A stretch of 62,939 nucleotides of DNA, counting the filler, from Octopus bimaculoides (lineage: Eukaryota), in assembly GCF_001194135.2 (NCBI RefSeq). It is 5 parts of 5 records of this genome, joined end to end, with 100 filler letters (N's around TTAATTAATTAA, not from the genome) between each part and the next. Parts side by side here need not be neighbours in the genome. Positions count along the whole stretch, not along the records: positions 1 to 27,092 come from NC_068993.1; 4 more parts are not named here. One strand, written 5' to 3'. The position numbers and the translations under genes were made by a program. This document shows, piece after piece, positions 15,501 to 16,883 of this stretch (the stretch's first letter is position 1; every line of letters starts with the position of its first letter). The notes under the pieces were generated by a model that saw only the letters and a program-made list of their open reading frames with translations, was not told the origin of the DNA and did no database searches.

Positions 15501-16883
15501 AGGTGTGGTAGTGTGTGTGTTGATTTTGCTCCCAAATAACTACAGCTGTTGAGTGTCCAAGTTAAGGGTGAGTGTTAGAAAGATGGGATGTGGGAGAATG
15601 GTTGAAGGGGGCAGATTGGGTGCAGGACCCAGCTTGTACAGGGGTAAGCATAATGCTTTTAAGACCTCAGGTTGCAAATTGCATTTTTTATCTTTCACTA
15701 GTTTTAGTCATTAGACTGCAGCCATGCTGGGGCACCACCTTGAGGAATTTTGGTCAAATGAATTGACCCCCAGTACTTTTTCTTTTTTTTAAGCCTGGTA
15801 CTTATTTTATCAGTTCCTTTTGCCAGGCTGCTAGGTTATGGGGATGTAAACATGCTAACACTGGCTGTCAAGTAGTGGTGAGGGGCAAGCACAGACACAA
15901 AGACACATTGTTATATAAAAAGGGTAAAGACCCCCTTTTGGTCATGAATGACCATGTGCTTGCATCTAGAAAGTTACCCTCCACAGTGCAAGGTTGTTTA
16001 TGGAAGACCAGCAGTCACCCATGCATACCAGCTTCCCCTCTCACGCCACTGATGTTATCCAAGGGAAAGGCAAAGACCAATACAACTTGGCATCAATGAT
16101 GTTGCAACTCATTTCTACAGATGAGTGGACTGGAGCAATAGGAAATTAAGTGCCTTGCTCAAGAGCACAACATGCAGCCTGGTCCAGGAATCGAACTCAC
16201 TACTTCATGATTGTGAGCTCAACACTGTAACCACTGAACCATGCCAAATCCACTCACGAAGCTATAGGGCTTTCTTATAAGTAGGTTATCTCCCTTGGCT
16301 AGGCGGCGCTCCATGTAGACAATTAAACTTCCGCAGACTATCCACGCTATTGTTATTGTTTTACGTCTTATCATGGTTATCAAGCAGGTCGGTGATTTAG
16401 CTATCGAAGTACTTACTGTGCCTGAGTTAAAGAAATATTTAAGATTATATGGACAATATGTTACTGGAAGAAAGGCGGACTTGACTGAAAGGTTGAAAGG
16501 TATAAAAATTCTGTCGATGAAGAATGTCAACAAAGTAAATTCATCGGACGATAAGTCTGAAGTATCGGACGATACTTCAGACAGGAATAAGCAGAAGCTT
16601 ATATCTCCTCTCGGTGTCTACATGGAGCACCGCCTAGCCAAGGGAGGTAACCTACTTATAGGAAAGCCCTATAGTAGAAGACACTCGCCCAAGGTGTCAC
16701 GCAGTGGGACTGAACCCAGGCTAATGTGGTTGGGAACCAAACTTCATATCTATGGCTTTAAATTTATTTTCTTTTCCAAAACTTCTCTGATCTATGAACC
16801 TGTTCTTTTATGTTTTTCAGGGTCAGAAACGGAAAGCAGATGGAACTCCCGATGGCAGAGGCAGACCAAAGAAAAAGAAATAA
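439..16883 (+). CDS. SMARCA5: ISWI-family ATP-dependent chromatin remodeller (SMARCA5/SMARCA1 orthologue), 5'-partial; 16 coding exons in window
   Basis: Spliced exons 439-570, 1591-1769, 1897-2033, 3035-3124, 3480-3601, 4721-4873, 5752-5884, 6887-7035, 8000-8233, 9602-9715, 10911-11036, 11437-11553, 12377-12511, 13386-13598, 14958-15074, 16821-16883 give a continuous frame colinear with recalled human SNF2H from LSEIVREFK to the C-terminal KRK.DG.PDGRG. Confidence 0.97.
1591..1769 (+). CDS. SMARCA5: ISWI exon: [10 protein letters not shown]...[22 protein letters not shown]...MQREW
   Basis: tttttag acceptor, gtgagt donor 1770; 179 nt, phase 0/2. Confidence 0.96.
1897..2033 (+). CDS. SMARCA5: ISWI exon: [10 protein letters not shown]...[18 protein letters not shown]
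   Basis: ccag acceptor, gtagct donor 2034; 137 nt, phase 2/1. Confidence 0.96.
2139..2393 (+). mobile_element. 5'-truncated RTE LINE 3'UTR copy ending in (GAT)n
   Basis: AAAAGCACCCACTACACTCTCGGAGTGGTTGGCGTTAGGAAGGGCATCCAGC...CGTTAAACGATGATGATG; same sequence follows the RTE ORF at 32860-33296. Confidence 0.85.
3035..3124 (+). CDS. SMARCA5: ISWI exon: [30 protein letters not shown]
   Basis: ttcag acceptor, gtaaga donor 3125; 90 nt, phase 1/1. Confidence 0.96.
3480..3601 (+). CDS. SMARCA5: ISWI exon: [21 protein letters not shown]...[12 protein letters not shown], motif IV
   Basis: ttcag acceptor, gttagt donor 3602; 122 nt, phase 1/0. Confidence 0.96.
3987..4631. mobile_element. Non-autonomous hAT-type DNA transposon (645 bp)
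   Basis: Imperfect TIRs CAGGGGTCAAGGAAC / GTTTGCTGACCCCTG and exact 8-bp TSD GGGTAGTG (3979-3986, 4632-4639). Confidence 0.85.
4721..4873 (+). CDS. SMARCA5: ISWI exon: VSINDFN...[16 protein letters not shown]...[11 protein letters not shown], motif V
   Basis: tacag acceptor, gtttgt donor 4874; 153 nt, phase 0/0. Confidence 0.96.
4911..5014 (-). mobile_element. Short RTE 3'UTR copy
   Basis: Reverse complement of the (GAT)n-tailed repeat at 2139-2393. Confidence 0.8.
5752..5884 (+). CDS. SMARCA5: ISWI exon: [44 protein letters not shown], motif VI
   Basis: atag acceptor, gtacag donor 5885; 133 nt, phase 0/1; missed by the ORF track. Confidence 0.96.
6000..6185 (+). mobile_element. Diverged RTE 3'UTR copy
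   Basis: GAAGGGCATCCAGCTGTGGAAAC...TTGGAGCCTGGTGCAGC...CCCATGCCAGCATGAAAAATGGACATTAAATGATG. Confidence 0.7.
6887..7035 (+). CDS. SMARCA5: ISWI exon: [24 protein letters not shown]...ILAKGEKR (NegC region)
   Basis: ccag acceptor, gtaatg donor 7036; 149 nt, phase 1/0. Confidence 0.95.
8000..8233 (+). CDS. SMARCA5: ISWI exon: TLEIQNKME...[32 protein letters not shown]
   Basis: ttcag acceptor, gtaaat donor 8234; 234 nt, phase 0/0. Confidence 0.95.
8457..8840 (-). mobile_element. RTE 3'UTR copy (longer)
   Basis: Starts CATCATCATCATCGTTTAACGTCCGC; its far end matches 32862-32930. Confidence 0.85.
9602..9715 (+). CDS. SMARCA5: ISWI exon (HAND): [38 protein letters not shown]
   Basis: tgcag acceptor, gtaagt donor 9716; 114 nt. 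Confidence 0.96.
10183..10400 (-). mobile_element. RTE 3'UTR copy
   Basis: Same repeat family on the reverse strand. Confidence 0.8.
10911..11036 (+). CDS. SMARCA5: ISWI exon (HAND): [42 protein letters not shown]
   Basis: tttag acceptor, gtaaga donor 11037; 126 nt; missed by the ORF track. Confidence 0.94.
11127..11351. mobile_element. Mariner-derived MITE (~220 bp)
   Basis: Imperfect TIR cores CTGAAAAGTTCCTGG / CCTAGGAACTTTTCAG, TA flanks; inverted sister copy at 45881-46097. Confidence 0.7.
11437..11553 (+). CDS. SMARCA5: ISWI exon (SANT): [39 protein letters not shown]
   Basis: ttcag acceptor, weak gtgcct donor 11554; 117 nt. Confidence 0.94.
11868..12147 (-). mobile_element. Tc1 transposon 3' fragment
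   Basis: TA + CAGGGGTTGGACAAAATAATGGAAACACC terminus; - strand reads [22 protein letters not shown]...[22 protein letters not shown]...KGDPTPY*. Confidence 0.85.
12377..12511 (+). CDS. SMARCA5: ISWI exon: [45 protein letters not shown]
   Basis: ctcag acceptor, gtgaga donor 12512; 135 nt. Confidence 0.95.
13386..13598 (+). CDS. SMARCA5: ISWI exon (SLIDE): [30 protein letters not shown]...[11 protein letters not shown]
   Basis: tgcag acceptor, gtaagt donor 13599; 213 nt. Confidence 0.96.
14958..15074 (+). CDS. SMARCA5: ISWI exon: [39 protein letters not shown]
   Basis: tacag acceptor, gtacct donor 15075; 117 nt. Confidence 0.94.
16266..16670 (+). mobile_element. Non-autonomous TIR DNA transposon carrying a SAP-domain ORF fragment, nested in a SINE
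   Basis: 59-bp inverted repeats 16262-16320 / 16616-16674 (3 mismatches); ORF from ATG 16373 contains [30 protein letters not shown]. Confidence 0.8.
16821..16883 (+). CDS. SMARCA5: ISWI terminal coding exon: [20 protein letters not shown]
   Basis: tttcag acceptor; basic tail resembling human [20 protein letters not shown]; TAA 16881-16883. Confidence 0.92.
   Translation, partial: GQKRKADGTPDGRGRPKKKK

What the first reader, a model, noticed from the sequence alone, without database searches (positions are those of the whole stretch)
16262..16674. SAP-domain-carrying TIR mini-transposon in the last ISWI intron
Seen: 59-bp inverted repeats enclose an ATG-started frame (16373) with a textbook SAP motif, [28 protein letters not shown]. 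The element splits a SINE at GCTATAGTAGAAGAC. Because the target CTATAG is palindromic, TSDs of 0, 2 (AT), 4 (TATA) or 6 bp all restore the empty site. Known: SAP domains occur in some DNA transposon proteins (Zisupton/KDZ), and ISL2EU (PHIS group) is described with AT TSDs. Inference: a deletion derivative of an unusual, possibly undescribed superfamily member that keeps a sense-oriented DNA-binding module inside a chromatin-remodeller gene.
Basis: partly seen in the sequence, partly recalled or inferred. Interest (0 to 1): 0.7.

Follow-up and report, generated by a model that had tools for sequence, protein, structure and literature searches.

The report
Truncated ISL2EU transposon in octopus ISWI intron
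The 413-bp inverted-repeat element is real, but it is an ordinary broken copy of a known two-gene DNA transposon type (ISL2EU), and its "SAP domain" frame is the leftover start of that transposon's accessory nuclease gene.

Summary
The inverted repeats are 60 nt and 95% matched. An ATG frame at 16373 hits Pfam SAP above the curated cut-off. A paralogous empty site in the same window (22200-22283) carries a single CTATAG.

The frame is the first 81 codons of a roughly 565-600-aa SAP-SWIM-YqaJ (PD-(D/E)XK exonuclease) protein. In six mollusc genomes this gene lies tail to tail with a THAP-HTH-DDE_Tnp_4 transposase gene. Both sit between inverted repeats that share the window's terminal motifs (TAT|AGGGC.TTC..ATAAG..TTAYCTCCC..ACTTCCG). 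That is the published ISL2EU (PHIS superfamily) layout, not Zisupton/KDZ and not an undescribed superfamily.

The window's empty site combined with two independent Haliotis copies leaves one consistent solution: a 2-bp AT duplication in a T|AT|A target, which is the canonical ISL2EU duplication. The element proper is then 16266-16670 (405 bp).

The SAP module was most likely kept because it lies about 150 bp from the left end, not because of any function. The element is a non-autonomous internal-deletion derivative in the last intron of an octopus ISWI gene.

No octopus transposase partner or genome-wide copy count was obtained.

The parts
16264..16265 (.). Left copy of the inferred 2-bp target-site duplication AT, within the flank C-T-AT. 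The palindromic target CTATAG spans 16262-16267.
   Evidence: The paralogous empty site holds a single CTATAG. The joint solution with the Haliotis copies gives AT.
16266..16321 (+). Left terminal inverted repeat (56 nt inside the element; 60 nt if the flanking TATA letters are counted), AGGGCTTTCTTATAAGTAGGTTATCTCCC...
   Evidence: 53 of 56 positions match the right arm. The motifs are shared with mollusc ISL2EU ends.
16327..16334 (+). Subterminal ACTTCCGC motif, about 40 nt upstream of the ATG. It resembles an ETS-type core promoter and is conserved at both ends of full-length relatives.
   Evidence: The promoter function is inferred, not tested.
16373..16616 (+). Remnant of the ISL2EU accessory gene: ATG plus the first 81 codons (MVIKQ...KQKLISPLG). 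Homology to the full-length gene ends at 16616.
16409..16498 (+). SAP domain coding region (residues 13-42).
   Evidence: Pfam PF02037, 25.4 bits against a cut-off of 23.9. PDB SAP domains (MKL1, THO1) match the family profile.
16543..16581 (+). Subfamily-specific 21-bp tandem duplication inside the ORF (ATCGGACGATAAGTCTGA / ATCGGACGATACTTCAGA), coding [13 protein letters not shown].
   Evidence: There is a single unit in P0006 and in P0016/L001.
16615..16616 (.). Internal-deletion junction. The 2-nt microhomology TG is shared by the ORF (..ctcggTG|aag.. in L001) and by the inner end of the right repeat (TGtctacatgg).
   Evidence: Direct comparison.
16615..16670 (-). Right terminal inverted repeat.
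16671..16672 (.). Right copy of the inferred AT duplication, followed by A-G.
16245..16261 (+). Left part of the short host repeat (SINE-like fragment) that the element split.
   Evidence: aligned to 22200-22283.
16675..16736 (+). Right part of the split host repeat.
22200..22283 (+). Paralogous empty site: the same repeat uninterrupted, reading GGCTATAGTAGAAGACAC.
   Evidence: 86% identity over 85 nt, no gap at the junction.
15075..16820 (+). Last intron of the ISWI-type host gene, which holds the element.
16821..16883 (+). Last ISWI exon ([20 protein letters not shown]). It is in a different frame from the element's read-through ORF.

Best explanation
Window 16266-16670 is a 405-bp non-autonomous, MITE-like internal-deletion derivative of an ISL2EU transposon (PHIS / Harbinger-like superfamily) in an octopus genome. 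The parent element carries two convergent genes between its inverted repeats. At the left end lies a SAP-SWIM-YqaJ (PD-(D/E)XK, lambda-exonuclease-like) accessory protein. At the right end lies a THAP-HTH-DDE_Tnp_4 transposase. A deletion with a 2-nt microhomology junction removed everything between codon 81 of the accessory gene and the inner edge of the right repeat. What remains is both repeats, the 5' leader and the SAP-coding start. The copy has no enzyme of its own, so it must have been moved in trans by the DDE transposase of an intact relative acting on the repeats (inferred). It landed in a TATA inside a short SINE-like repeat in the last ISWI intron and duplicated the central AT. The SAP frame is most likely a passenger kept because of its position next to the left end, and it has no role in ISWI.
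For: (1) The repeats, the ORF and the SAP hit are confirmed. (2) All 14 database relatives of the ORF are short Octopus bimaculoides proteins, 80-94% identical over residues 1-81. They have different deletion breakpoints behind the same N-terminus, which is the pattern of a family of deletion derivatives. (3) Longer octopus copies run on into the first half of a SWIM finger (...HSADCNCTAG). A Logan contig (L001) starts inside a related left repeat, has the same leader and ATG, and continues after an intron into a YqaJ domain at Pfam E=4e-20. (4) Full-length relatives of 554-600 aa are all SAP + SWIM-like + YqaJ. The family profile matches a solved lambda-exo-type exonuclease, 3syy, at E=8e-12, and also matches SAP domains. 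(5) The YqaJ gene lies tail to tail with a THAP/HTH_Tnp_4/DDE_Tnp_4 gene in Sinanodonta, Mercenaria, Mya and two independent Haliotis rufescens copies. tblastn finds an uncalled or degraded partner in Haliotis cracherodii, Gigantopelta and Mizuhopecten. (6) The Sinanodonta element is 4.57 kb, and its repeats begin TAT|AGGGCATTCCAATAAG. The window's begin TAT|AGGGCTTTCTTATAAG. An alignment of 11 ends shows shared blocks and a subterminal ACTTCCG. (7) The literature gives ISL2EU as a THAP-HTH-DDE transposase plus a YqaJ ORF, an AT duplication, about 4.8 kb, and animals only, including four oyster families. (8) Duplication: the window's empty site rules out 0-bp and TA models. In the Haliotis copies (gac-TAT|TCGAC...GTCGA|ATA-ggt and tta-TAT|TCGAC...GTCGA|ATA-ctg) the fourth letter behaves as repeat (T...A), not as a direct duplication, which rules out TATA. 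The unequal outer letters in Sinanodonta (T...G) argue against 6 bp. Only AT fits everything.
Against: No octopus copy of the THAP-DDE gene was recovered. So the autonomous partner in this genome is inferred from other molluscs and from L001. L001 was not identified to species; it is about 85% similar by eye to a second O. bimaculoides subfamily (P0017/18/20). The transposase was not placed in a tree with Repbase ISL2EU, Harbinger, Spy, Pangu and Nuwa references. The AT duplication rests on carrying cleavage geometry over from a Haliotis family to the octopus family. The flanking preference T|AT|A and a repeat starting AG differ from the published A|AT|T and 'usually GG'. The copy number of this exact 405-bp form is unknown, and no database protein shares its junction.
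Confidence: 0.88

Rival explanations
1. One reading: a derivative of an unusual or undescribed superfamily, or of Zisupton/KDZ, whose transposase itself carries the SAP domain.
For: SAP is unusual in annotated transposon ORFs. The three ISL2EU papers read here do not contain the words SAP or SWIM. A search for YqaJ + 'SAP domain' + transposase found no paper.
Against: The SAP frame continues into SWIM + YqaJ, not into a transposase. The linked enzyme is DDE_Tnp_4 with THAP and HTH_Tnp_4 in six mollusc genomes. The layout, size and duplication match published ISL2EU.
Confidence: 0.02
2. The truncated SAP mini-ORF is functional. It might be transcribed from the retained ACTTCCG-type promoter to give a SAP peptide that competes for transposon DNA, acting as a repressor in the manner of the P-element KP protein. 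Or it might be spliced into ISWI transcripts.
For: The ATG, leader, promoter-like motif and 81 codons are intact, and the element is in sense orientation in the intron. Some O. bimaculoides gene models fuse such remnants to other exons (P0022, P0023).
Against: The frame reads through the right repeat into intron sequence, and in a frame different from the last ISWI exon. No hit to the ORF is longer than 278 aa, so no annotated ISWI isoform contains it. Four of the first 13 residues differ from the family majority. Keeping the segment is explained by its position. The open frames among database hits are selected by gene callers.
Confidence: 0.06
3. Same family, but this mollusc clade makes a 4-bp TATA duplication (C|TATA|G, with repeats starting GGGC). 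That would be a new duplication type in PHIS, alongside NuwaII's C|TNA|G.
For: The window, Sinanodonta, Mya, Gigantopelta, Mizuhopecten (left end) and Mercenaria ends are all preceded by TATA. A GG start would match the published 'usually GG'.
Against: The Haliotis family has TATT...AATA in two independent copies, and its right end in H. cracherodii is the same. That is an inverted relation, not a direct one. The Mizuhopecten ends differ at one position under the AT model but at two under TATA.
Confidence: 0.08
4. The SAP-SWIM-YqaJ nuclease, rather than the DDE protein, is the enzyme that moves these elements.
For: It is conserved, sits next to a repeat end, and combines DNA-binding modules with a nuclease.
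Against: It is always paired with a DDE_Tnp_4 transposase of a family known to do cut-and-paste. Accessory PD-(D/E)XK nucleases also occur in Kolobok lineages next to a DDE enzyme.
Confidence: 0.02

Closest known systems
ISL2EU transposons (PHIS / Harbinger-like superfamily; e.g. Repbase ISL2EU-8/10/11/15_CGi of Crassostrea gigas, as tabulated in PMC4482050 Table S2)
   Same: Two ORFs between inverted repeats: a THAP-HTH-DDE_Tnp_4 transposase (444-544 aa published; 507-537 aa here) and a YqaJ protein (477-545 aa published; 528-600 aa here). The element is 4.6-6.9 kb against about 4.8 kb published. The duplication is 2-bp AT in a 4-bp AT-only palindrome. Hosts are animals, molluscs included. 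Non-autonomous derivatives are common (746-1483-bp families are listed).
   Different: The flanking preference is T|AT|A rather than A|AT|T. The repeats start AG (octopus and most bivalves and gastropods) or TC (Haliotis) rather than 'usually GG'. No octopus or cephalopod ISL2EU appears in the papers searched. The SAP and SWIM modules of the YqaJ protein are not mentioned in those papers.
PIF/Harbinger and its MITEs (Tourist-like)
   Same: Related DDE_Tnp_4 transposase, a two-gene organisation with a DNA-binding accessory protein, AT-rich palindromic targets, and abundant deletion derivatives.
   Different: Harbinger's second ORF is a Myb/SANT protein and its duplication is the 3-bp TWA. Here the second ORF is SAP-SWIM-YqaJ and the duplication is AT.
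Zisupton / KDZ
   Same: Only that SAP and SWIM-type modules are said to occur in their proteins.
   Different: No KDZ-type transposase domain was found in any relative. The linked enzyme is DDE_Tnp_4, and the net gain at the window's empty site allows at most 6 bp of duplication.
[quoted passage not shown]
   Same: A DDE cut-and-paste element that also carries a lambda-exo-type nuclease.
   Different: It belongs to a different transposase superfamily, and there the nuclease is fused downstream of the transposase domain rather than encoded as a separate convergent gene.

Membership tests
ISL2EU (PHIS superfamily) | DDE transposase of the DDE_Tnp_4 type with HTH_Tnp_4 and an N-terminal THAP domain | tested here: met
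   Met for full-length relatives that share the window's repeat motifs and ORF. Sinanodonta L002 hits DDE_Tnp_4 at E=1e-43, HTH_Tnp_4 at 2e-14 and THAP at 3e-8. The same holds in Mercenaria, Mya and Haliotis rufescens, and by tblastn in L003, L006 and L007. The window's element lacks it (deleted), and no octopus copy was recovered.
ISL2EU (PHIS superfamily) | [quoted passage not shown] | tested here: met
   The window ORF is the N-terminus of this protein. L001 continues the same ORF into YqaJ at E=4e-20. P0024, P0029, P0030 and P0037 are SAP + YqaJ.
ISL2EU (PHIS superfamily) | 2-bp AT target-site duplication | tested here: met
   The window copy alone is ambiguous (0, 2, 4 or 6 bp). Its paralogous empty site, two independent Haliotis copies and the Sinanodonta flanks together leave AT as the only consistent model. 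This is a cross-family inference.
ISL2EU (PHIS superfamily) | Target A|AT|T and repeats 'usually' starting GG | tested here: not met
   Here the target is T|AT|A and the repeats start AGGGC, AGTCC, AGGAC or TCGAC. The paper words this as a tendency, shown for one Plutella family, so this marks a variant and does not exclude membership.
ISL2EU (PHIS superfamily) | Autonomous length about 4.8 kb; animal hosts | tested here: met
   The Sinanodonta element is about 4.57 kb and the Haliotis element 6.93 kb. All hosts identified are molluscs, plus one hemichordate relative of the YqaJ protein.
ISL2EU (PHIS superfamily) | Transposase falls in the ISL2EU clade in a DDE phylogeny, apart from PIF/Harbinger, Spy, Pangu and Nuwa | not tested
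Non-autonomous deletion derivative / MITE | Small, bounded by TIRs, flanked by a duplication, lacks a transposase, and derives from a longer element by internal deletion | tested here: met
   It is 405 bp with 56-nt repeats at 53/56 identity. Both internal ends are collinear with the parent's ends, and the junction has a 2-nt microhomology. High copy number of this exact form was not testable.
SAP domain (Pfam PF02037) | Score above Pfam's gathering cut-off | tested here: met
   25.4 bits against 23.9, residues 13-42. Relatives score 25-41 bits.
Zisupton / KDZ | KDZ-type transposase encoded by the full-length element | tested here: not met
   Pfam scans of the full-length relatives and their neighbours show only SAP, SWIM, YqaJ/Viral_alk_exo, THAP, HTH_Tnp_4 and DDE_Tnp_4/DDE_Tnp_1.

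The most novel reading that the evidence does not exclude
Two readings are not excluded. First, the mollusc ISL2EU accessory protein may be a dedicated SAP-SWIM-PD-(D/E)XK nuclease that does second-strand cleavage or end resection, as TnsA does in Tn7. Second, short derivatives such as this one, which keep the promoter-like ACTTCCG motif and an intact SAP mini-ORF, may be expressed as SAP-only peptides that compete for transposon DNA and damp transposition. Alternatively they may be exonised now and then into host genes such as ISWI.
Probability: 0.06. Interest if true: 0.5.

Novelty: new member of a known kind. Interest (0 to 1): 0.2.

Why it matters
It matters little for biology at large. 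It is one more intronic remnant of a DNA transposon, and it removes a candidate new superfamily from the list. Three modest points may be useful. First, ISL2EU elements and a family of their deletion derivatives are present in octopus, where about 25 'SAP domain-containing' or 'uncharacterized' O. bimaculoides UniProt entries are really fragments of this transposon gene. Second, the ISL2EU accessory protein, described in the papers read here only as a 'YqaJ' DNA-binding protein, has a conserved SAP - SWIM-like - PD-(D/E)XK architecture across molluscs. That gives a concrete hypothesis for its unknown role. Third, the mollusc clade uses a TATA target (T|AT|A) rather than AATT.

Tried and rejected
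- No RNA-seq or population evidence was obtained.
- **Octopus copies.** Look-ups of the octopus UniRef proteins P0003 and P0001 found no contigs. No further octopus genomic copies or flanks could be fetched, and the available DNA collections hold no octopus genome.
- **RNA scans.** Rfam at gathering thresholds and the tRNA scan found nothing.
- **Promoter scan.** The bacterial-type promoter and terminator scan is irrelevant for a eukaryote and was disregarded.
- **Structure model.** The AlphaFold model of P0024 from a 10-sequence alignment had a mean pLDDT of 51.5. Only the SAP region (about residues 10-50) and the YqaJ core (about 380-520) were confident. I therefore ran no fold search and relied on the sequence matches to solved structures.
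- **Literature.** Searches for ISL2EU + octopus, PIF-ISL2EU + cephalopod, and YqaJ + 'SAP domain' + transposase returned nothing.
- **Transposase search.** The search with the Sinanodonta DDE protein listed no octopus hit among the 120 hits shown.
- **Unusable ends.** The left terminus in L003 is replaced by unrelated sequence. The right end in L006 is disrupted by a second left-type terminus. The right end in L005 lacks five terminal letters. None of these was used for the duplication argument.
- **Rejected ideas.** A 6-bp duplication or CTATAG as part of the repeat is disfavoured because the outer letters vary: C, T, A. Read-through of the ORF into the ISWI exon is rejected because the frames differ.
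Full report
**1. What is in the sequence**

The region contains a 60-nt inverted repeat. Its arms are 16262-16321 and 16615-16674, they are 95% complementary, and 293 nt separate them. A 22-nt piece of the arm occurs nowhere else in the window and is not expected by chance.

An ATG at 16373 opens a frame whose residues 13-42 hit Pfam SAP. The hit is E=1.1e-5 at 25.4 bits, against a curated cut-off of 23.9. The frame does not stop inside the element. It reads through the right repeat and ends at 16900.

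The window carries exons of an ISWI-type remodeller on the + strand, shown by SLIDE and Helicase_C hits. The penultimate exon ends ...GPKPGTPK|GT at 15074. The last exon, 16821-16883, reads [20 protein letters not shown]. The element therefore lies in the last intron, in sense orientation. Its read-through frame differs from that of the exon.

**2. The empty site**

I joined the two flanks with a single CTATAG. The result aligns without a gap to a second copy of the same short repeat at 22200-22283 (...CACAAGGCTATAGTAGAAGACACTTGCCC...) and to a third, more diverged copy at 19139-19190.

So is its remark that a palindromic CTATAG lets duplications of 0, 2, 4 or 6 bp all restore the site.

**3. 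What the ORF belongs to**

All 14 relatives of the 101-aa frame are short Octopus bimaculoides proteins. They are 80-94% identical over residues 1-81 and diverge after different breakpoints. This is the signature of a family of internal-deletion derivatives, and it points to an octopus host.

Longer octopus members run on to ...HSADCNC(TAG), which is the first half of a SWIM finger.

One assembled contig (L001, Logan) is informative:
- It begins inside a related left repeat.
- It has the same leader and ATG.
- After a 0.2-kb intron it completes the SWIM finger (GEACNHIGALL).
- It then continues into a YqaJ / viral alkaline exonuclease domain at Pfam E=4e-20.

A full HMMER scan of 1.8 billion representative proteins found 118 relatives. 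The full-length ones, at 554-600 aa, are all SAP + SWIM-like + YqaJ. The family profile matches a solved lambda-exonuclease-type enzyme (3syy, E=8e-12), mimivirus R354, herpesvirus alkaline exonucleases and several SAP domains. The conserved SPDG...EIKCP...QVQGQM block is the PD-(D/E)XK signature (the motif reading is my own).

**4. The partner gene and the whole element**

In Sinanodonta woodiana (L002) the SAP-SWIM-YqaJ gene spans 10001-12110 in two exons. It lies tail to tail with a 507-aa gene that carries THAP, HTH_Tnp_4 and DDE_Tnp_4. Both genes are enclosed by inverted repeats at 9898-9938 and 14427-14467, giving an element of about 4.57 kb.

The same gene pair is present in other molluscs:

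| Species | Locus |
|---|---|
| Mercenaria mercenaria | L004 |
| Mya arenaria | L005 |
| Haliotis rufescens (two independent copies, plus L009, a segmental duplicate of L008) | L008, L010 |
| Haliotis cracherodii (degraded or uncalled) | L003 |
| Gigantopelta aegis (degraded or uncalled) | L006 |
| Mizuhopecten yessoensis (degraded or uncalled) | L007 |

The element ends share the window's architecture: TAT | AG(G/T)(G/C)C. TTCC. ATAAG ... TTA(C/T)CTCCC ... ACTTCCG, followed by the ATG about 40-60 nt further in. The Sinanodonta left end matches the window's at 33 of 46 aligned positions.

**5. Comparison with what is known**

Three papers describe exactly this organisation as ISL2EU, a Repbase superfamily grouped with PIF/Harbinger and Spy as 'PHIS'. 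Their description has these features:
- One ORF with DDE, HTH and THAP.
- A second ORF with a YqaJ exonuclease domain.
- An AT duplication.
- Autonomous elements of about 4.8 kb.
- Animal hosts only, including four Crassostrea gigas families.
- Short non-autonomous families.

None of the three papers contains the words SAP or SWIM. No paper in the searchable library pairs ISL2EU with octopus or cephalopods.

The window's element is therefore a member of a known kind. The Zisupton/KDZ comparison and the idea of an undescribed superfamily are not supported.

**6. Resolving the duplication**

The letters outside the TATA vary between ends: C, T and A. So they are neither repeat nor duplication, which disfavours 6 bp.

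The H. rufescens family has two independent insertions that are 99.5% identical over 6.93 kb, with unrelated flanks. They read gac-TAT|TCGAC...GTCGA|ATA-ggt and tta-TAT|TCGAC...GTCGA|ATA-ctg. The fourth letter is T on the left and A on the right. That is an inverted relation, so it belongs to the repeat and a direct TATA duplication fails.

A 'TA' model or a 0-bp model would fit Haliotis. But in the octopus copy they predict an empty site of CTAG or CG, whereas the paralogue shows CTATAG.

The only model that fits all the data is a 2-bp AT duplication in a T|AT|A target. The element proper is then 16266-16670 (405 bp), with 56-nt repeats matching at 53 of 56 positions. This is the canonical ISL2EU duplication. 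The flanking preference (TATA rather than AATT) and the first repeat letters differ from the published generalisation.

Two caveats apply. The argument carries geometry over from one family to another, and it rests on few copies.

**7. How the copy arose and what it does**

Homology to the parent ORF ends at 16616 (..ctcggtg), and the right repeat begins at 16615 (tgtctacatgg). The deletion junction therefore has a 2-nt microhomology. This is typical of deletion derivatives of cut-and-paste elements (established knowledge).

With no enzyme of its own, the copy must have been mobilised in trans. This is inferred.

The SAP codons start about 145 bp from the left end, so any derivative that keeps a working left end keeps them. 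I therefore read the 'sense-oriented DNA-binding module' as a passenger.

Indirectly, no annotated protein joins this SAP segment to ISWI.

**8. Limits**

- No octopus THAP-DDE copy was recovered.
- No genome-wide copy count was made.
- There was no Repbase or Dfam look-up.
- No DDE phylogeny was built.
- The structure model was poor outside the SAP and nuclease cores.

**9. Verdict**

The element is an ordinary non-autonomous ISL2EU derivative, a new member of a known kind, and of low interest.

The small by-products are:
- the SAP-SWIM-YqaJ architecture of the ISL2EU accessory protein;
- the TATA target preference in molluscs;
- the re-reading of a set of octopus 'SAP domain-containing proteins' as transposon fragments.

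Noticed in passing
window 16327-16334; also L001 about 62-70, L002 about 9962 and 14370, L005 both ends, L006 about 1352, L007 both ends, L004 about 8200: An ACTTCCG(G/C) motif sits 40-60 nt upstream of the ATG of both convergent genes, just inside each repeat, in every family examined. It looks like an ETS-type core promoter carried at both element ends. The window's derivative keeps the left one, pointing the same way as ISWI.
   Followed up: partly
window 16543-16581: A 21-bp tandem duplication inside the ORF (SDDKSEV / SDDTSD). It is specific to the 'MDIKQLDD' octopus subfamily and is single-copy in P0006 and in L001/P0016.
   Followed up: partly
window 15941-16244 (minus strand) and 21026-21327: Two copies in opposite orientation, 80% identical, of a roughly 300-bp repeat. 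Its end reads like a tRNA-derived SINE head (reverse complement: GGTTCAGTGGTTA...GGTTCGATTCCTGGACC). It directly abuts the short repeat that the ISL2EU derivative split.
   Followed up: partly
proteins P0022 and P0023 (Octopus bimaculoides UniProt entries): Some gene models fuse fragments of this transposon gene to unrelated sequence: SAP + SWIM fragment + a Kazal domain and an acidic tail in P0022, and a lysine-rich N-terminus + SWIM fragment in P0023. These may be annotation chimeras or real exonisation. About 25 'SAP domain-containing' or 'uncharacterized' octopus entries are pieces of this element.
   Followed up: no
L006 6691-6850 (Gigantopelta aegis): A second left-type terminus (TATAGTCCTTTCCAATAAGG, then ACTTCCGG) lies in direct orientation only tens of nt outside the start of the THAP match (about 6650), where the inverted right end is expected. 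It could be a nested insertion or an inversion of the end. It is unresolved.
   Followed up: no
L008 and L009 (Haliotis rufescens JALGQA010000017.1, about 33 kb apart): The whole 14-kb locus, flanks included, is duplicated at 99.8% identity. So these two 'copies' are one insertion carried by a segmental duplication, or an assembly duplication. In L009 the transposase gene model is shorter (294 aa).
   Followed up: partly
protein P0132 / P0279 (Ptychodera flava, hemichordate): A 727-788-aa relative matches the SWIM-like region and the YqaJ domain but gives no SAP hit. The accessory-protein family therefore reaches beyond molluscs with a different N-terminus.
   Followed up: no
L005 11335-11372 and L007 13009-13040: Old copies show decayed right termini: five terminal letters are missing in Mya, and TAAT replaces TATA in Mizuhopecten. 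The left ends are intact.
   Followed up: partly
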